Positions 1-20,544 of a stretch of DNA of 64,000 nucleotides are shown in pieces. This stretch comes from Chrysemys picta bellii (taxonomy: Eukaryota), in NCBI RefSeq assembly GCF_011386835.1, contig NC_088792.1, positions 265,546,001-265,610,000 of the forward strand, read 5' to 3'. Under the pieces are notes generated by a model. The model was given only the letters and a program-made list of their open reading frames with translations, ran no database searches and was not told the origin of the DNA. The position numbers and the translations under genes were made by a program. Positions within the stretch are counted from its first letter, which is position 1, and each line of letters opens with the position of its first letter.

Positions 1-292
1 CATGTAACAACTACTCATGACTGTCAATGGGTGTTTTAATCCACATTCAAAACCTAGCTATTCGCTTTCTCCCAAGTGGAACAAAAACATATGAAACTCC
101 TATGCAACTACTGAAGTATGAACATTATATGTATGGCTTTATACCTGGAGGCCACAGCTCTGCTGTGCTAGGCACTGTGCAAACTGTATCAAAGAGGTAG
201 TCCCAGAACCAAACAGCTTACAACTGAAGTTGAAGAGGAGAGACAACAGAGGGACACAAACAAATGGGGGGGGGGGGGGGAGATGAGAAAAG

Positions 293-14505: not shown

Positions 14506-16316
14506 TTCCATCAGCACGTGCACAAGGATTCTCAGCACACATATTTCCGAGCCCCAATGACTCATTATCTCCAGCTATTGATCCACTAATTAAAAAAATT
14601 CTGCAGGAAATTACTTCCTCTTTGTAGGTCTACACTGACCCAGCTAGTGCAATTTTAACAGGTCACACACATGCTGCAAACATCTCTTACCACTTTCATC
14701 AGGTCATTCCTTGCAATACATTATTACCTACCATTCACATTCACTATTTGATCCACTGCTGGGATCTCATTCTCTCTTTGTTTGAGGATACTTTTTGAGG
14801 GGGAGGGGGAGAGGACTAGTAACAAAGGTCGGACTGAAAATACACAAAAGCCAGGAAACTCAGAGTTCAGGCTGAAAATGTGTGCTGACACTGCAGCATT
14901 ATCTCCCATCATTAAGCCTTTTCTGGATCTTTTGGCACAAGTGCTAGAGTTAAGGCCAGGGTGTCAGCAGAGATTTTCAGGCTTCCTGATGAATTTCTTT
15001 GCTTAAATCAAATGCTTAATGTCACTTAGACATACTATTCGTTAACACCAAATCAATCTTTAATGAAAATTGTGCGCGCACACACACTTTTATATATGCC
15101 ATTAGCTATATTCTTCGCAGTGGCCGTGAATTCTGTATGAGCAAACTTGTAAAGTCCCAGCTATCCAAAGTGGACACAGAGGCGGAGTAAGCAAGTGGCT
15201 GAATGGTACTGACAAACAGACCAGAGTAACCGTAGCAATCAAAATTTCACAGAGTAGTGTCATATAGCAAGTATCGGTCTCTCCCCTCCAGCCTGAAATC
15301 AGGAGGAAAAAAGGTTGTGTTTTTTTAAAAATGGATTCTGAAGCTTCACTGTAGAGCAGTTCCACAGGAGGTTGGCTACAAGCTGGCATTGGAGGTTTCA
15401 GACTGTACTTGTCTATGGTATTGTAGAAAACAAGAAAGCGCACACACACACTCTTCAATCTCAAGGTCCTTTAGTTATGGAACCTGGGCTCATGGAAGTT
15501 CTGCTGATTTTATTCCATGAAACAAAAATGCTTTACCAGACTCACAAAACGTATCCTACAGATGACAATATTTGGGCTAGATCACAGCAACCCTCACTGA
15601 AACTGATGATGACTTACTGAGGTAAGTAAATCCATTTAATTTTTCCAGAGTAAGAACTCATAATCAAGGTGAGTATGGCTGGTGTATTTTACTCCCTTAT
15701 GTTTTGCATATTTGAGTTTATGAGGAAACGTCATCAACTAATAATTTGAAGGAAGGTTCAATAAAACAGTTCAGTATTCTCAAGTTCTAATTGTCACAGG
15801 GTGATGATCAAGAGCAAATTCTGATTAGCAGCCTAATGAAAATGAGAACCTGGCTCAACTGCGAGTATTGATTAACTAGTGGGAGCCACCAGTTTTAAAG
15901 GGCAAGATTGTTGCAGTGTAATACTTATTGTGTTACACTATATAAGGTGGACACCTTTTACTGAGGCCTTGGCTACACTTGCAGATGTACAGCACTGTGA
16001 GTTAAACCTGACTTCGTGCAGCTGAGTAGGGAAAGCGCTGCAATCTGTCCACACTGACAACTGCCCAGCGCACTGTCGTGGCCACATTTGCGGCAATTGC
16101 AGCGCTATTGGGAGCAGTGCATTATGGGCAGCTATCCCACAGAGCACCTTTTCTCATTCTGGCGCCACGGGTTGTGAGAAGGGGAGTGTGGATGCGGGGG
16201 GTCCTGTCCCAATGTCCCGTGATGCATCGCTTCGCATCACAGAAAGCCCTTTGTTTCCGTCCACCTTTGGCACCATCTTTCAACGGTTTCTGTGCAGCAC
16301 AATCTGTCTGCGGGAA

Positions 16317-17596
16317 ATGGAGTCCGAACTGCTGAGGCATATGCTGACGAGTCTCGCCAGTACGTCATGTTTGGCTGTCGAACTATTCCTTAAGATTGAG
16401 AGTGAGGAGTCCGACAATGCTATCGAGCCACGTAACGTGTACGACACGAAATTGCTTGTGGCATTCACGGACACGTTCAGCACCGTGGAACGCCGCTTTT
16501 GGGCTTGGGAAACAAGCACCGAGTGGTGGGATCACATCGTCATGGAAGTCTGGGATGATGAGCAGAGGCTGCAGAACTTTCGGATGAGAAAAGCCACTTT
16601 CATGGGACTGTGTGAGGAGCTCGCCCCCACCCTGCGGCGCAAGGACACATGAGGGCTGCCCTGCCAGTGGAGAAGCGGGTAGCTATTGCAATCTGGAAAC
16701 TGGCAACTCTAGACAGCTACCGGTCAGTCGCAAACCAGTTAGGAGTGGGAAAGTCGACCGTTGGAATCGTGTTGATGCAAGTTTGCAAGGCCATTAATCG
16801 CATCCTACTCAGAAAAACCGTGACACTGGGTAACGTGCAGGAAATAGTGGATGGCTTTGCACAAATGGGTTCCCTAACTGTGGAGGGGCGATAGATGGGA
16901 TGCACATTCCTATTCTGGCATCACCCCACCTAGGATCCGAGTACGTTAATCGGAAGGGATATTTCTCTATGGTTCTCCAGGCGCTTGTGGATCACCGTGG
17001 GCGTTTCATTGACATTAACACAGGCTGGCCCGGAAAGGTGCATGACGCACGCATCTTTTGGAACACTTGGCTGTTCAGGAAGATGCAGGCCAGGACTTTT
17101 TTCCCCAGAGCGAAAGATCACGGTAGGGGAAGTTGAAATGCCCATTGTGATCCTTGGAGATCCCGCTTACCCGTTAATGCGGTGGCTCATGAAACCCTAC
17201 ACAGGGAGCCTTGACAGCAGCAAGGAACGGTTCAACTACAGGCTGAGCCAGTGCCGAATGACTGTGGAGTGTGCCTTTGACCGTTTAAAGGGCCGCTGGC
17301 GATCTCTGTATGGGAAGCTGGACTTGGCCGAAAACGGCATTCCCGCGGTTATATCCGCGTGCTGTGCCCTCCATAATATTTGTGAAGGGAAGGGTGAAAG
17401 CTTCACTCAGGCATGGACCTCTGAGGTTCAACAACTGGAGGCTGAATTTGCACAGCCAGAGAGCAGGGCTATTACAGGGGCCCAGTGCGGGGCTGCAAGG
17501 ATTAGGGATGCCTTGAGGGAGCAATTTGAGGCTGAAAACCAGCAGATATATCTGGTGCCCTGCACGGGAGTGAAGTGCAGTAGTTCCAATCTTTAG
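16317..17596 (+). pseudogene. Harbinger DDE transposase (HARBI1/DDE_Tnp_4-like), disrupted by three frameshifts
   Basis: Four ORF-track pieces join into FRMRKATF..LCEEL, HTH-like VAIAIWKLAT..SYRSVANQLGVGKSTV, GAIDG(M)HIP (D at 16894), NRKGYFS, WPGKVHDARIF, LGDPAYP (D at 17159), FNYRLS..RMTVECAF (E at 17267) and CCALHNIC. Frameshifts lie near 16648, 16871 and 17100. An alternative upstream ATG is at 16188. Confidence 0.94.
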
Positions 17597-17676
17597 GAAT
17601 CAGTGTTTGCTAAGCAGACAAACAGACTTGCAGTGCCTGTTTATTTCCTGGGCTAAGGAGTCTTTTACTTTAATGC

Positions 17677-17720
17677 AATAATAAAGAATGTTTTCAAAGC
17701 CAAAAAAATCCATTTATTGA
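17677..17720. terminator. Back-to-back poly(A) signals of the convergent Harbinger genes
   Basis: AATAAA on + at about 17680 (downstream of the transposase) and TTTATT (AATAAA on -) at about 17713-17718 (downstream of the Myb gene), in an A/T-rich spacer. Confidence 0.6.
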
Positions 17721-17775
17721 AAAGAAAAAAAAATTATTGGAGAGAAACAAGGGGGTGGAGTGGGGAACAGTACAA

Positions 17776-18337
17776 TCACAGATTCGCGTATGTCCTGTCT
17801 GGTGTGCTGTGCAGTGAGTGCTGCACTTCAGGACATCTATACTGCATGGTGATGGGGGTTGAGTGCAGAGGGTAAGGGTCATGGTTTTCAGGGCTGGGTG
17901 ATGAAGATACTGGTGTTGGAGGCAGCGGGTGGCGTGAAGAACACGGAAGTTGGGGAAAGTGGGTCGGAGGTGACAGTGGGGCACAACGGAAAGAGTTTTG
18001 GGACAAGGGCTGTAGGGGGGGTGGCGTTTGCAGTACTGCTCCTCTTTCTGCATGGCTACCAGCTCCTGGATAGCATCTGCTTGGCGCTCCAGGATGCTTA
18101 TGAGCCTATCAGTGCTTTGCTGCCGGTGCGCGGTGCTTTGCCGCCGGTGCGCTGCATTTTCCTGGCGGATCCTGCTTTCTCTCTCCCTCCAGTTCTGTGC
18201 TTTCTCATTCTCTTTAATAGATTGCCACATCACTTCTTGCAACATGTCGTCTTTGCTTTTTCGCGGTTTCTTCCTGAGTCTTTGCAGTCTCTGAGCAGGC
18301 GATAAGAGGGACGGCTGAGGTCTCAAGGTTGATGCAG
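17776..18337 (-). CDS. Harbinger Myb/SANT protein, exon 2 (basic NLS-like segment, coiled coil, Pro-rich tail; probable frameshift near 18020)
   Basis: Acceptor TTTTGCCTATACAG|CT at 18338 is phase-compatible with exon 1 (G|CT = Ala). It reads AASTLRPQ..RLRKKPRKSKDDMLQEVM..ERQADAIQ. The Pro-rich tail continues in the 17776-18006 frame. Confidence 0.75.
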
Positions 18338-18498
18338 CTGTATAGGCAAAATGCAACATTTAACAGAGGCAGCATTGTTTATACCTGACAGAGTAATGAT
18401 TCCCCCCGCACTTAAGGAGTAGAAAACACACAGGGTCTACACAATAGCATAATTTTCCCGTCCGAAACAGAGCACACATATCCCACAGGAGCCTCAAA

Positions 18499-18923
18499 AT
18501 GGTGAGTAAGGGGGACTGATTGTTTCAGGGCTGCACTGTCCTCTGGGTTTCTGTGCCTTGGGGAGAGGCAACAGCTGCAGGGGGCCGCTATACTGAACAC
18601 TGTCCCCACATTTTCCATAGGAGTTCGTCCTGGACGATATCTCGCTGCTGAGAGTGACCTGGGAAGCAAGGGAGGGTCTTCCACTGCAATGCGGCTTCCA
18701 CCCTGGCCCATATGCAGCTTGCCTGTGTGCAGCAATGGTCCCCCCGCCCCTTGCGGCACAGTGGCGCGGACACGTTAGCCTGGCTGGGACAAGGACCATG
18801 GTGGCTCCCCCAATAAACCTGCACAAGCGCATTGCACACGTTCTGGATGAGACATTCGAGGAAATTACCAAGGCCGATTACCGCGATGTGATAAACCACA
18901 TCAATGCACTATTCCGCATCTAG
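18499..18923 (+). CDS. Candidate third Harbinger gene nested antisense in the Myb intron (ATG exon 18499-18501 plus exon 18621-18923; 101 aa, unknown function)
   Basis: AAAATG|GTGAGT donor, 119-nt intron, TTTTCCATAG|GAG acceptor, then an open frame EFVLDDISLL...LHKRIAHVLDETFEEITKADYRDVINHINALFRI-stop. Confidence 0.45.
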
Positions 18924-19006
18924 GCATGCATGCCTAACCCTCCTCTCCCAAAGAGCCCGCACCCGAAAAGGGAAAAAATCCCTTCCCGAAAAAAAAAAAC
19001 GCTTAC

Positions 19007-19538
19007 CGGGAACCTGCTCTTCTGTTTGTCCTCCACCAAGTACCAGCCGCTGCGACTGGCTACCTTCCTCCTGGCTCAAGAAGAGCTCCTGGCTGCACGG
19101 CTCCAGGGATTCTGGGGTGTCTCCATTCGGCCCACCACCATCACTCCCGTTTTCCTCCTTCTCCTCCTCTTCCTCCTTCCCCCCCCACACCGGCTCTGAA
19201 GTGTCCATAGTGGTGCTCGGAGTGGAGGTGGGATTAACCCCAAGTATCGCATCCAGCTCTTTGTAGAATCGGCAGGTCGCGGGGGGAGCACCCGAGTGGC
19301 CGTTTGCGTCGCGGGCTTTGCGGTAGGCACTCCGCAGCTCCTTCACTTTAATCCTGCACTGCAGGGCGTCCCGGTCATGGCCCCTTTCCGTCATGTCCTT
19401 TGATACCTTCCCGAAGGTATCGTAATTCCTACGGCTGGAGCACAGCTGGGACTGGACAGCTTCCTCCCCCCAAACACTGATGAGGTCCAGCAACTCGCCA
19501 TTGCTCCATGCTGGGGCTCGCTTGGCGCGTGGAGGCAT
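19007..19538 (-). CDS. Harbinger Myb/SANT-like (trihelix, Myb_DNA-bind_4-type) DNA-binding protein, exon 1
   Basis: MPPRAKRAPAWSNGELLDLISVWGEEAVQSQL...RDALQCRIKVKELRSAY...TCRFYKELDAILG, followed by an acidic tract. ATG at 19538, donor G|GTAAG at 19006. The exon is 532 nt (phase 1). Confidence 0.9.
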
Positions 19539-20544
19539 GGTCACCTGGAAAGATTCGCTGATAGCACTCCACACCACGCCGGGCTGAGCAAACAGGAAGG
19601 GGATTTTTAAAATTCCCAGGGAATGCAAAGGGTGGGTCACATGGTTGGTTACCTGAGGCCAGGGCAGTAGATTTTGAACTGATGACCAGAGTGGCTAGAA
19701 CAGGCATTGTGGGATACTGCCGAATAATTCTGGAGGCCATTCACAGCGCATTGGGCGGCAGCGCAATACTTGCTATTCCTCTCGGAGAGGTGGAGTACAT
19801 GCAGCGCTGCAACCACGGAGATACAGCGCGGCAAATGCCTTGCCAGTGTGGACGGGGAGTGAGTTACAGCACTGGGGGAGCCTTTACAGCGCTGTAACTC
19901 GCAAGTGTAGCCAAGGCCTGAGTTGGATGAAATAGATTTTTAAAAGGCCCAAACAAAGTTATTGCTGGTAACTCAATAGACTTAGCAACCCAAAGCTGAA
20001 ACAACTCCTTTTTACAGAATTAAATATGCCATCAAATAAGGGAAACTGCAATTGATGTTTATGGCTGACATCATGCAAGTAGCAGAGCATGTATGTAGTT
20101 AGCCTGTCCCTTTTAAAATTCAGACCAGGACCGGTTGCAAATTACAAAAATTACTGAAATTACAAAGTGAACTATCAAGAGATCTTAACTCAGCAGGAAC
20201 AAAACTAGCTAATCGCTGGTTAGGAACTTCGGAAATTACAAACTAATCTAATTAGAGACTTTATCTTGTCAGTTACAGTCCACGTGTTAAATATTTATCA
20301 GTAAATCAAAAAATGGAAGGTTAGTTACACTGGCACATGAATTACTAGTTTCATGCTAGAACACTTGCCAGCGTGGATCAACGTTAAACAAAATGACTGA
20401 TTTGGCTTTTACAGTTTTAAAGACAAGTAATTAAATATCATCCATAAATAAATAAAGTTGTACTGAAAGCGAAGGAGGCCACAGATATAATGAAGGCTGT
20501 CAAAAGGGGATGAAACATACACTAAGGTGACATGAATTAAACTA

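What the first reader, a model, noticed from the sequence alone, without database searches (positions are those of the whole stretch)
18499..18923. Candidate third, spliced gene hidden antisense inside the intron of the Harbinger Myb gene
Seen: the 669-nt Myb intron (18338-19006) holds, on the opposite strand, an ATG immediately followed by a consensus donor (caaaATG|GTGAGT, 18499-18507). A 119-nt intron follows, with a branch-like TACTGAAC (18591-18598) and the acceptor TTTTCCATAG|GAG (18620). The TAG of the acceptor is the in-frame stop that bounds the ORF. The phase-0 join gives a 101-aa protein: M-EFVLDDISLLRVTWEAREGLPLQCGFHPGPYAACLCAAMVPPPLAAQWRGHVSLAGTRTMVAPPINLHKRIAHVLDETFEEITKADYRDVINHINALFRI. 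Its C-terminal 35 aa have clear amphipathic-helix periodicity. It lies beyond the transposase poly(A) signal (about 17680), so it would be a separate unit. Established: PIF/Harbinger elements are normally described with two genes (DDE transposase and Myb/SANT). Inference: a small accessory protein (regulator, anti-silencing factor or transposase partner) that annotation would miss because its first coding exon is only ATG. Against: no AATAAA between 18923 and the right TIR.
Basis: partly seen in the sequence, partly recalled or inferred. Interest (0 to 1): 0.8.

Follow-up and report, generated by a model that had tools for sequence, protein, structure and literature searches.

The report
Hidden BEN-domain gene in turtle Harbinger
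A turtle Harbinger transposon, a kind always described with two genes, carries a third, two-exon gene nested backwards inside the intron of its Myb gene; it evolved as coding sequence and encodes a 101-residue protein with the fold of the BEN DNA-binding domain.

Summary
ATG|GTGAGT lies at 18499-18507, a 119-nt intron follows, the acceptor ends at 18620, and a 100-codon ORF runs 18621-18923.

It is not a chance ORF. Across 12 related copies from eight turtle species the ORF evolved as coding sequence in this frame:
- dN/dS is 0.38; the out-of-phase frames give 0.75-1.28 and the wobble-sharing antisense frame 0.51.
- Internal-branch changes by codon position are 49/43/82, p=1e-4.
- The codon-model test gives p=5e-4.

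Divergent Harbinger families keep the ATG|GT donor, a 107-158 nt intron with unconserved interior, the acceptor and a homologous ORF.

With a 45-sequence alignment AlphaFold gives pLDDT 90. The best solved matches are all BEN DNA-binding domains (BEND3 BEN4, Z 12.2). The closest reviewed protein is the Xenopus germ-plasm protein Pat.

RefSeq host-gene isoforms in turtles end in this exon, which implies its acceptor works, if those models rest on transcripts. AATAAA, missing here, lies about 70 nt after the stop in most relatives.

Not shown: the 18501/18621 junction in RNA, a promoter, or any activity. Every copy examined has a broken transposase.

I found no paper describing this. First readers of this scan noted the same gene at five other copies in this genome.

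The parts
15965..19918 (+). Whole PIF/Harbinger copy. 18-bp terminal inverted repeats GGCCTTGGCTACACTTGC; 3-bp target-site duplication TGA at 15962-15964 and 19919-19921.
   Evidence: Depth in a DNA run falls from tens of thousands to about 10 outside these ends.
16317..17596 (+). DDE transposase gene, broken in this copy into at least four reading-frame pieces. Its AATAAA is at 17680-17685.
   Evidence: Pfam DDE_Tnp_4 8e-17. Longest open stretch 220 of about 425 codons.
19007..19538 (-). Myb/SANT-like gene, exon 1 (ATG at 19538).
   Evidence: Pfam Myb_DNA-bind_4 3.5e-17. Joint 18337 to 19007 in contigs of runs X1 and X2, absent from DNA run X15.
18338..19006 (-). Sole intron of the Myb gene (GT..AG on the minus strand). 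It holds the whole third gene.
17694..18337 (-). Myb/SANT-like gene, exon 2, in phase with exon 1.
18499..18501 (+). Start codon of the third gene. It is the last three bases of its first exon, in the context AAAATGG. The transcription start upstream is not known.
   Evidence: ATG directly before GT in 12 of 13 copies that retain the region (the deleted L008 copy also reads ATGGTGACT), including divergent families L005, L011b and L012.
18502..18620 (+). 119-nt intron of the third gene: GTGAGT donor, TACTGAAC branch-like site, pyrimidine tract and AG.
   Evidence: Introns of 107-158 nt in 13 copies. The ends are conserved, while the interior is only 0.42-0.52 identical between families. An in-frame TGA at 18594-18596 closes the frame upstream.
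18621..18923 (+). Coding exon 2: 100 codons plus TAG. It encodes a complete BEN-like domain.
   Evidence: dN/dS 0.38. Periodicity p=1e-4. Likelihood-ratio test p=5e-4. AlphaFold pLDDT 90.4. Z 12.2 to BEND3 BEN4.
18989..18999 (+). A-run at the place where 7 of 10 main-family copies have AATAAA. This is the probable poly(A) signal of the third gene, lost in this copy.
16034..16106 (.). Left subterminal cluster of CAGCGC(T) motifs, a candidate protein-binding array.
19744..19894 (.). Right subterminal cluster of CAGCGC(T) motifs, including the palindrome CAGCGCTG twice.

Best explanation
This Harbinger family carries a third gene, nested on the opposite strand inside the single intron of its Myb-like gene.

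Structure of the gene. The first exon ends with the start codon. A short intron of about 120 nt is removed. The second exon encodes 100 residues. In most relatives a poly(A) signal follows about 70 nt after the stop, just inside the Myb intron.

Product. The 101-residue protein is essentially one BEN domain, a BEN-solo protein. BEN is a fold known as a sequence-specific DNA-binding module.

What is shown: the gene structure, its conservation, its evolution under purifying selection while the family was active, and the predicted fold.

What is inferred:
- that it is transcribed on its own from within the Myb intron;
- that it binds DNA;
- my preferred guess at function. The protein would recognise the CpG-containing CAGCGC(T) repeats clustered under both ends of the element. 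It would then help or gate assembly of the transposase and Myb-like protein complex there.

This particular copy is a fossil. Its transposase is broken and its poly(A) signal is lost, although the BEN frame and both splice sites happen to be intact.
For: Coding signature across 12 copies from eight turtle species. All but one copy were fetched through their Myb proteins, so the sample is blind to this ORF.
- Nei-Gojobori dN/dS is 0.38 in the + frame 0. The other frames give 1.10, 1.16, 0.75, 0.51 and 1.28. The transposase gives 0.41-0.48 and Myb 0.53-0.62.
- On a tree built without this region, internal-branch changes by codon position are 49/43/82 (permutation p=1e-4) and terminal-branch changes 71/66/86. 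The transposase shows the same pattern. Nine non-coding control frames show none.
- The signal survives removal of all CpG columns, p=0.005.
- The GY94 likelihood-ratio test gives omega 0.65, p=5e-4, and is unchanged without the one copy chosen through the ORF.
- This frame has no stop in 8 of 9 main-family copies. Every other frame has 1-6 in nearly every copy.

Gene structure.
- ATG|GT occurs in 12 of 13 copies that retain the region. The pyrimidine tract plus CAG|G occurs in 13 of 13. Introns are 107-158 nt.
- This includes families whose transposase is only 68-79% identical in DNA. In those families the intron interior is 0.42-0.52 identical and the ORF 0.51-0.68.
- Contig L012 holds an intact divergent copy with a phase-0 join and 104 codons.

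Protein.
- The profile search finds 80 cluster representatives. Among them are the C-terminal domains of zebrafish LOC541387 and Xenopus Pat-like.
- AlphaFold gives pLDDT 90.4 and pTM 0.82.
- All 16 solved chains with Z of 5 or more are BEN domains. BEND3 BEN4 scores Z 12.2, rmsd 2.0 A over 88 residues; BANP 9.4; BEND6 7.8; Insv 7.0.
- AlphaFold DB clusters named BEN domain-containing protein match at TM 0.70-0.75.
- Xenopus Pat matches at TM 0.91.

Use of the exon.
- RefSeq XP_ isoforms of PFKFB4, TEDC1, RAB3C and CDK6 in Trachemys, Chrysemys and Malaclemys end in this exon, starting at its acceptor.
- AATAAA follows the stop in 7 of 10 main-family copies.
Against: - No RNA joint 18501 to 18621 appeared among the 15 listed joints of three probable RNA runs. 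Contigs run unspliced through the donor (18257-18576) and through the acceptor (18517-18730). Those contigs may be DNA or pre-mRNA, and 34 joints were not shown.
- No promoter or transcription start is identified. The TATA-like TTTATAC at 18378 is not conserved.
- AATAAA is absent from this copy, from its two closest relatives and from the divergent families.
- Pfam BEN is reached only below threshold. Seven of 45 family members hit it, best E 0.005, and one full-length relative reaches 4.7e-4.
- A sequence profile finds no BEN chain in the PDB. For helical folds, Z near 12 is not far above background.
- The antisense frame that shares the wobble position also shows omega below 1 (0.51 and 0.70). 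The choice of strand therefore rests on open frames, splice sites, start and stop, and protein homology.
- Gene models in three families join the transposase N-terminus to this exon. The exon may therefore not always be a separate unit.
- No copy with an intact transposase was seen, so a role in transposition is untested.
Confidence: 0.65

Rival explanations
1. The BEN exon is real and selected, but it is not a separate gene. It would be an alternative last exon of transcripts that start at the transposase promoter, giving a fusion of the transposase N-terminal part with a BEN domain. The conserved ATG|GT would then be secondary.
For: RefSeq models LOC128825970 X1 and X2 in Malaclemys join the transposase N-terminus (...STDWWDRIVLQV) to this exon. 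Two Chelonia models do the same in other subfamilies, P0002 and P0133. The exon is readily used as a terminal exon by upstream host exons.
Against: - An ATG in a good initiation context sits exactly at the donor in four separate lineages, within otherwise unconserved sequence.
- The transposase has its own stop and its own AATAAA at 17680.
- The donors used in the three fusion models lie at different places.
- One subfamily carries an ATG inside the exon just before the domain (VTMSDITLL), which points to independent initiation.
Confidence: 0.2
2. The exon is a captured piece of a host gene, the last exon of a Pat-like gene with its acceptor and poly(A) signal. It would be carried passively, with no role for the element.
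For: The domain is C-terminal in fish and frog proteins of 230-445 aa. The turtle exon begins exactly at the start of the domain with a strong acceptor. In the tree the fish and frog group is the sister of the turtle group, so direction is open.
Against: A passenger would decay neutrally. Instead, the internal branches that span several subfamily radiations show codon periodicity and omega below 1 at the level of the transposase. Start, donor and acceptor are also kept. Capture followed by co-option is compatible with the best explanation; only the passive version is disfavoured.
Confidence: 0.07
3. It is a chance open frame in a G+C-rich, conserved intron. The conservation would reflect constraints on the Myb pre-mRNA or on a non-coding antisense RNA.
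For: Three other ORFs of 103-125 aa overlap on the minus strand. Within the main family the small intron is even more conserved (0.90) than the ORF (0.88). No junction reads were seen.
Against: Three-base periodicity, which no RNA-level constraint predicts. The frame is uniquely open. Between families the ORF is conserved but the small intron's interior is not. The fold is confident, BEN-like, and has protein relatives outside turtles.
Confidence: 0.03
4. The coding frame is the wobble-sharing frame on the Myb strand (minus frame 1, window ORF 18494-18871). It would be an alternative Myb exon.
For: dN/dS is 0.51 and omega 0.70 (p=0.004) in that frame. It is open for 125 codons in this copy.
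Against: Sharing the wobble position is expected to give such values. That frame has 1-5 stops in nearly all copies and no ATG. The only Myb-strand joint seen skips the whole intron. Its translation has no relatives, while the plus frame gives a folded BEN domain.
Confidence: 0.02

Closest known systems
Canonical PIF/Harbinger elements, e.g. zebrafish Harbinger3_DR and the source of HARBI1, NAIF1 and the MSANTD genes
   Same: DDE_Tnp_4 transposase, a Myb/SANT-like second gene, terminal inverted repeats and a 3-bp target duplication.
   Different: These elements are described with two protein-coding ORFs (PMC9392472). This family has a third gene, nested antisense in the Myb intron.
BEN-solo DNA-binding factors (Drosophila Insensitive, Elba1/2; mammalian BEND5/6) and the BEN domains of BEND3 and BANP
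   Same: A single BEN-like fold with no other domain. Best structural matches are BEND3 BEN4 and BEN3, BANP, BEND6, Insv and NACC1. [quoted passage not shown] BANP and BEND3 prefer unmethylated CpG motifs (PMC4281564, PMC11472053).
   Different: At 101 aa the protein is little more than the domain itself. Sequence similarity to Pfam BEN is below threshold. It is encoded by a transposon. DNA binding is untested.
Xenopus germ-plasm protein Pat (Xpat, O73622), Xenopus Pat-like, and zebrafish LOC541387
   Same: The C-terminal domain is the closest relative outside turtles. TM is 0.91 at 24% identity to Pat residues 186-282. Profile E-values are 1e-6 to 2e-7 to Pat-like and LOC541387.
   Different: Those are proteins of 290-445 aa with long N-terminal regions, annotated as host genes in the records I saw. 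Pat is a cytoplasmic germ-plasm particle protein (PMC3827131). The direction of descent, domestication or capture, is unresolved.
Turtle hypothetical proteins already in databases (Chelonia mydas UY3_03743 and others; Caretta LOC125632421; Malaclemys LOC128826488)
   Same: The same ORF. UY3_03743 is the same M-plus-exon-2 model of 101 aa.
   Different: They are annotated as isolated hypothetical proteins. The records returned here give no link to the transposon or to the BEN fold.

Membership tests
PIF/Harbinger superfamily (the host element) | DDE transposase of the DDE_Tnp_4 / PIF type | tested here: met
   PF13359 at 8e-17 on the last frame piece. The gene is broken in this copy.
PIF/Harbinger superfamily (the host element) | Second gene for a Myb/SANT-like DNA-binding protein | tested here: met
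   PF13837 at 3.5e-17. Two exons in phase, with the splice seen in RNA-like contigs.
PIF/Harbinger superfamily (the host element) | Terminal inverted repeats and a 3-bp target-site duplication (usually TWA) | tested here: met
   18-bp perfect inverted repeats. The duplication is TGA here, TTA in L003 and TAA/TTA in L006.
PIF/Harbinger superfamily (the host element) | Only two protein-coding genes, as the superfamily is described | tested here: not met
   A third frame under purifying selection with its own start, intron and stop. The element is still a Harbinger; it is the description that is too narrow.
BEN domain (Pfam PF10523) | Sequence match above Pfam's gathering score | tested here: not met
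   The window's peptide gets no BEN hit at E up to 1. Seven of 45 family members hit BEN below threshold, best 0.005. P0155 reaches 4.7e-4 with 20.8 bits against a cut-off of 23.2.
BEN domain (Pfam PF10523) | The BEN fold: a compact, mostly helical domain of about 90-100 residues | tested here: met
   Model pLDDT 90.4. Z 12.2, 11.9 and 10.8 to BEND3, 9.4 to BANP, 7.8 to BEND6, 7.0 to Insv and NACC1, covering 84-91 of 100 residues. No other fold reaches Z of 5. Named BEN clusters in AlphaFold DB also match.
BEN domain (Pfam PF10523) | Sequence-specific DNA binding | not testable with these tools
   Needs a gel-shift, SELEX or protein-binding-microarray assay. The subterminal CAGCGC(T) arrays are only a candidate target.
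Pat / Pat-like family (Xenopus, fish) | Shared C-terminal domain | tested here: met
   Profile E 1e-6 (Pat-like) and 2e-7 (zebrafish LOC541387). TM 0.91 to Pat.
Pat / Pat-like family (Xenopus, fish) | Long N-terminal region before the domain | tested here: not met
   The turtle product is M plus the domain only. It shares the domain but is not an ortholog of Pat.
Nested antisense intronic gene | The whole transcription unit lies inside a host intron on the other strand | tested here: inconclusive
   The start codon, intron, coding sequence, stop and, in relatives, AATAAA all lie within 18338-19006. The transcription start and the poly(A) site themselves were not observed.
Nested antisense intronic gene | Its own spliced transcript | tested here: inconclusive
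   No 18501/18621 joint among the listed joints. The acceptor is used in RefSeq host-gene isoforms. Two-exon gene models exist: P0003 and P0131.

The most novel reading that the evidence does not exclude
The BEN-solo protein is a required third component of the transposition machinery of this Harbinger lineage. It would read the palindromic, CpG-containing CAGCGCTG repeats under both ends, as BANP and BEND3 read unmethylated CpG motifs. The transposase and Myb-like protein complex would then be directed only to unmethylated, unsilenced copies. The vertebrate Pat / Pat-like germ-plasm proteins would be domesticated descendants of such a transposon gene.
Probability: 0.12. Interest if true: 0.9.

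Novelty: new variant of a known kind. Interest (0 to 1): 0.8.

Why it matters
Harbinger is the textbook two-gene DNA transposon, and it is the source of several vertebrate genes (HARBI1, NAIF1, the MSANTD genes).

A conserved third gene changes what counts as a complete element in this lineage. A complete, working element of this lineage might need that gene as well.

It adds BEN to the DNA-binding modules carried by eukaryotic transposons. It gives a compact natural example of a two-exon gene packed antisense into a 669-nt intron.

It gives a fold, and a possible origin, to the C-terminal domain of the Xenopus germ-plasm protein Pat. None of the records or papers I saw describe that protein as a BEN protein.

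It also explains a set of odd RefSeq isoforms in turtles. The exon acts as a ready-made terminal exon that truncates host proteins such as PFKFB4, CDK6, RAB3C and TEDC1 and adds a BEN domain to them.

Tried and rejected
- Self-comparison of the window found no second copy.
- Pfam on the peptide alone gave nothing useful. The UNC45-central hit at 0.048 was rejected as chance.
- The ESM Atlas feature search gave a best score of 0.77, which is uninformative.
- AlphaFold with the first, 11-row alignment was poor, pLDDT 53. Only the 45-row alignment gave a confident model.
- The sequence profile against PDB chains gave only weak TFIIA-gamma and Tet rows (E 0.05-1) and no BEN chain. I treat these as chance.
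- Complex prediction on two copies of the peptide gave no verdict, because the chain itself did not fold without an alignment.
- A search from the divergent stand-alone homolog P0153, meant to learn its organism, returned four unnamed proteins.
- Contig L012 was fetched in the hope that it was a spliced mRNA. It is unspliced, and the M of protein P0138 is a GTG taken by a prokaryote-style gene caller. It still gave an intact divergent copy.
- My first transposase N-terminal control (16319-16648) was two bases out of frame. That gave dN/dS 1.07 and reversed periodicity. In the right frame (16317-) the counts are 42/36/62.
- The bacterial promoter and terminator scan is irrelevant to a eukaryote.
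- Minus frame 1 as a Myb exon, and a micro-exon reading of CCCACAG|GAGCCTCAAAATG, were both considered. The first fails on stops. In the second, the upstream AG is not conserved in L011b.
- Literature searches found no paper that describes a third Harbinger gene or links BEN to Harbinger. The terms were Harbinger with third ORF, ORF3, BEN domain, turtle and Chrysemys, and BEN domain with transposon.

Full report
**1. The observation**

The sequence is as described.
- caaaATG|GTGAGT lies at 18499-18507.
- A 119-nt interval follows, with TACTGAAC at 18591-18598.
- The acceptor ttttccatAG|G ends at 18620.
- An open frame of 100 codons runs 18621-18920, with TAG at 18921-18923.

It lies inside a Harbinger copy, 15965-19918. 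The copy has 18-bp inverted repeats and the target duplication TGA.
- The transposase on the plus strand (16317-17596, DDE_Tnp_4 8e-17) is broken into several frames.
- The Myb-like gene on the minus strand has two open exons, 19538-19007 and 18337-17694 (Myb_DNA-bind_4 3.5e-17).

The Myb intron 18338-19006 is real. Contigs of two runs that are probably RNA join 18337 to 19007 with GT..AG on the minus strand. A whole-genome DNA run of the same organism does not. That DNA run also shows the family has thousands of copies.

Length alone proves little. Three minus-strand ORFs of 103-125 aa overlap the same G+C-rich stretch.

**2. Related copies**

The peptide finds seven turtle proteins at 69-90% identity. 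To avoid choosing copies by the ORF itself, I fetched loci through Myb-like proteins of seven species.

This gave nine main-family copies at 77-93% DNA identity to the window. They come from Chrysemys (2), Chelonia (2), Malaclemys, Macrochelys, Eretmochelys, Chelonoidis and Pangshura. One Chelonia copy, L001, was the one found through the ORF, and the Pangshura copy has most of the region deleted. It also gave three copies of older families in Chelonia, whose transposase DNA is only 68-79% identical (L011a, L011b, L005). A Logan contig, L012, gave a fourth divergent copy.

None of these copies has an intact transposase. All are fossils, so most differences between them are neutral decay after insertion. 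Selection can show only on the internal branches, which record the time when the lineages were active.

**3. Coding signature**

The two other plus frames give 1.10 and 1.16. The minus frames give 0.75, 0.51 and 1.28. The transposase core gives 0.41-0.48 and the Myb exons 0.53-0.62.
- On a tree built from the rest of the element, parsimony changes on internal branches fall 49/43/82 on codon positions 1/2/3 (permutation p=1e-4). On terminal branches they fall 71/66/86 (p=0.054). The transposase behaves the same way (36/39/90 against 89/103/124). Nine frames of non-coding controls show nothing. Both halves of the ORF carry the signal.
- The signal remains after all CpG columns are removed: 0.33/0.35/0.57 changes per site, p=0.005.
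- A Goldman-Yang codon model gives omega 0.65 against 1 (p=5e-4). The result is the same without the one ORF-selected copy. The transposase gives 0.40-0.50 and Myb 0.47-0.69.
- In codon columns defined by the window, this frame has no stop in 8 of 9 main-family copies and one stop in L011a. Every other frame has 1-6 in nearly every copy.

The minus frame that shares the wobble position inherits part of the signal (0.51; omega 0.70). It is closed by stops in almost all copies.

**4. Gene structure**

Of 13 copies that retain the region, 12 have ATG immediately followed by GT. The exception, L011a, reads ATA|GTGAGC. All 13 have a pyrimidine tract and CAG|G, or TAG|G in the window. The interval is 107-158 nt.

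In the older families the interior of this interval is no better than 0.42-0.52 identical to the main family. The flanking Myb-intron sequence is 0.47-0.59 identical, and the ORF 0.51-0.68. The ORF is thus about as conserved as Myb exon 1 or more so (0.50-0.63), and more so than Myb exon 2 (0.45-0.61). Conserved ends with a free interior are what an intron looks like.

In L012 the join is in phase 0 and gives an intact 105-residue product.

Upstream of the acceptor the frame is closed by a conserved TGA with no ATG between. The predicted fold uses nearly the whole exon, from residue 8 onward. Translation therefore has to enter at the start of the exon. This is what the spliced ATG provides.

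One subfamily instead has an ATG inside the exon just before the domain (VTMSDITLL).

Seven of ten main-family copies have AATAAA about 70 nt after the stop, five or six bases before the complement of the Myb donor. The window and its two nearest relatives have an A-run there. The window's TAG at the acceptor is also private; the family has CAG.

**5. The protein**

Pfam, the ESM Atlas and a shallow AlphaFold run said nothing.

A profile of the turtle sequences against 1.8 billion cluster representatives found 80 hits at E up to 1e-3. They fall into three groups.
- Several turtle subfamilies.
- Unnamed ORFs of about 100 aa from Logan contigs.
- The C-terminal domains of fish and frog proteins. 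These include zebrafish LOC541387 (445 aa), Xenopus Pat-like (439 aa), multi-copy catfish proteins and frog KRAB zinc-finger proteins.

With a 45-row alignment, AlphaFold gives five helices at pLDDT 90.4 and pTM 0.82.

Foldseek's best solved matches are BEN domains: BEND3 BEN4 at probability 0.99 and TM 0.68, then BANP, BEND6 and NACC1. On re-alignment, all 16 chains with Z of 5 or more are BEN domains. BEND3 BEN4 scores Z 12.2, rmsd 2.0 A over 88 residues. BEND3 BEN3 scores 10.8, BANP 9.4, BEND6 7.8, Insv 7.0.

Fold clusters named BEN domain-containing protein match at TM 0.70-0.75. Among reviewed proteins the top match is Xenopus Protein Pat, residues 186-282, at TM 0.91.

At the sequence level BEN is only the commonest sub-threshold Pfam family: 7 of 45 members, best 0.005, and P0155 at 4.7e-4. 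I therefore call it a distant BEN-fold domain, not a Pfam-certified member.

BEN is an established sequence-specific DNA-binding domain. BANP and BEND3 prefer unmethylated CpG motifs (PMC4281564, PMC11472053).

**6. Evidence that the exon is used**

RefSeq isoforms of PFKFB4 (Trachemys, Chrysemys), TEDC1 and RAB3C (Chrysemys) and CDK6 (Malaclemys) end in this exon. A glycine-transporter-like model in Mauremys does too. In all of them the exon is entered at its acceptor. I could not inspect the evidence behind those models.

It also contains a variant with the in-frame GAT insertion, which is seen in some copies as well (P0131, place 18620).

Three models join the transposase N-terminus to the exon: P0002, P0133 and Malaclemys LOC128825970. 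This keeps alive the rival that the exon is, at least sometimes, an alternative end of transposase transcripts.

My single read-laying run showed no 18501/18621 joint among the 15 joints listed. It showed unspliced contigs across both sites. This is a real gap, but a weak negative. The runs are stored as contigs, thousands of dead copies are co-transcribed with host genes, and 34 joints were not displayed.

**7. How it probably works**

Shown:
- a conserved, selected, two-exon coding unit nested antisense in the Myb intron;
- a confident BEN-like fold.

Inferred:
- independent transcription;
- DNA binding;
- the target.

The element has CAGCGC(T) motifs clustered under both ends. In this copy ten lie within 16034-16106 and 19744-19894, and one lies in the 3.4 kb between. 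The pattern is the same in most main-family copies. CAGCGCTG is a palindrome.

I guess that the BEN protein reads these repeats and helps or gates assembly of the transposase and Myb-like protein complex. The Myb-like protein is an equally good candidate for that site, so this is only a lead.

**8. Novelty**

Papers in the held library describe Harbinger with two ORFs (PMC9392472). None links it to BEN or to a third gene.

After I had reached the BEN result, a look at the scan's notes showed the same proposal from first readers at five other copies in this genome. Those notes are unchecked and are not independent evidence. They do show that the feature recurs.

Noticed in passing
proteins P0132, P0146, P0143, P0145, P0154 (no window coordinates): RefSeq isoforms of turtle host genes end in a Harbinger BEN exon: PFKFB4 X4, TEDC1 X5, RAB3C X3, CDK6 X2 and a glycine-transporter-like model. 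The exon acts as a ready-made alternative last exon that truncates the host protein and adds a BEN domain.
   Followed up: partly
proteins P0165, P0168, and Swiss-Prot O73622: The C-terminal domains of the Xenopus germ-plasm protein Pat, of Pat-like and of zebrafish LOC541387 belong to the same BEN-like family (TM 0.91 to Pat). Whether these derive from a transposon gene, or the transposon captured a host exon, is open.
   Followed up: partly
window 16034-16106 and 19744-19894: CAGCGC(T) motifs, including the palindrome CAGCGCTG, are clustered under both ends of the element and nearly absent inside it. Most main-family copies show the same. These are probable binding sites for one of the element's DNA-binding proteins.
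   Followed up: partly
L008:8542-9064 (Pangshura tecta): This copy has lost most of the BEN gene by deletion. It keeps the ATG|GT stub, the first codons of the exon and the stop region. Its Myb gene is still modelled as a 311-aa protein.
   Followed up: no
L006:9042-9552 (Malaclemys): About 510 bp of unrelated sequence are inserted in the Myb intron just upstream of the BEN start codon. This is probably a later insertion of another repeat.
   Followed up: no
window 18257-18576: In three runs of three differently labelled organisms, contigs nearly identical to the window (2-4 differences in 260-320 nt, depth 88-228) cover the Myb exon 2 / intron boundary and the BEN start and donor, unspliced. 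I cannot tell whether they are DNA, Myb pre-mRNA or BEN pre-mRNA.
   Followed up: no
window 17640-17685: The poly(A) signals of the convergent transposase gene (AATAAA, 17680-17685, plus strand) and Myb gene (TTTATT, 17640-17645, read on the minus strand) lie past each other. The two 3' ends should therefore overlap by a few tens of bases.
   Followed up: no
L005:8618-8698 and L010:30074-30282: Fragments of further Harbinger copies lie in the fetched loci. Each has a BEN-like piece antisense just downstream of a Myb exon 1, so the association holds in additional subfamilies.
   Followed up: partly
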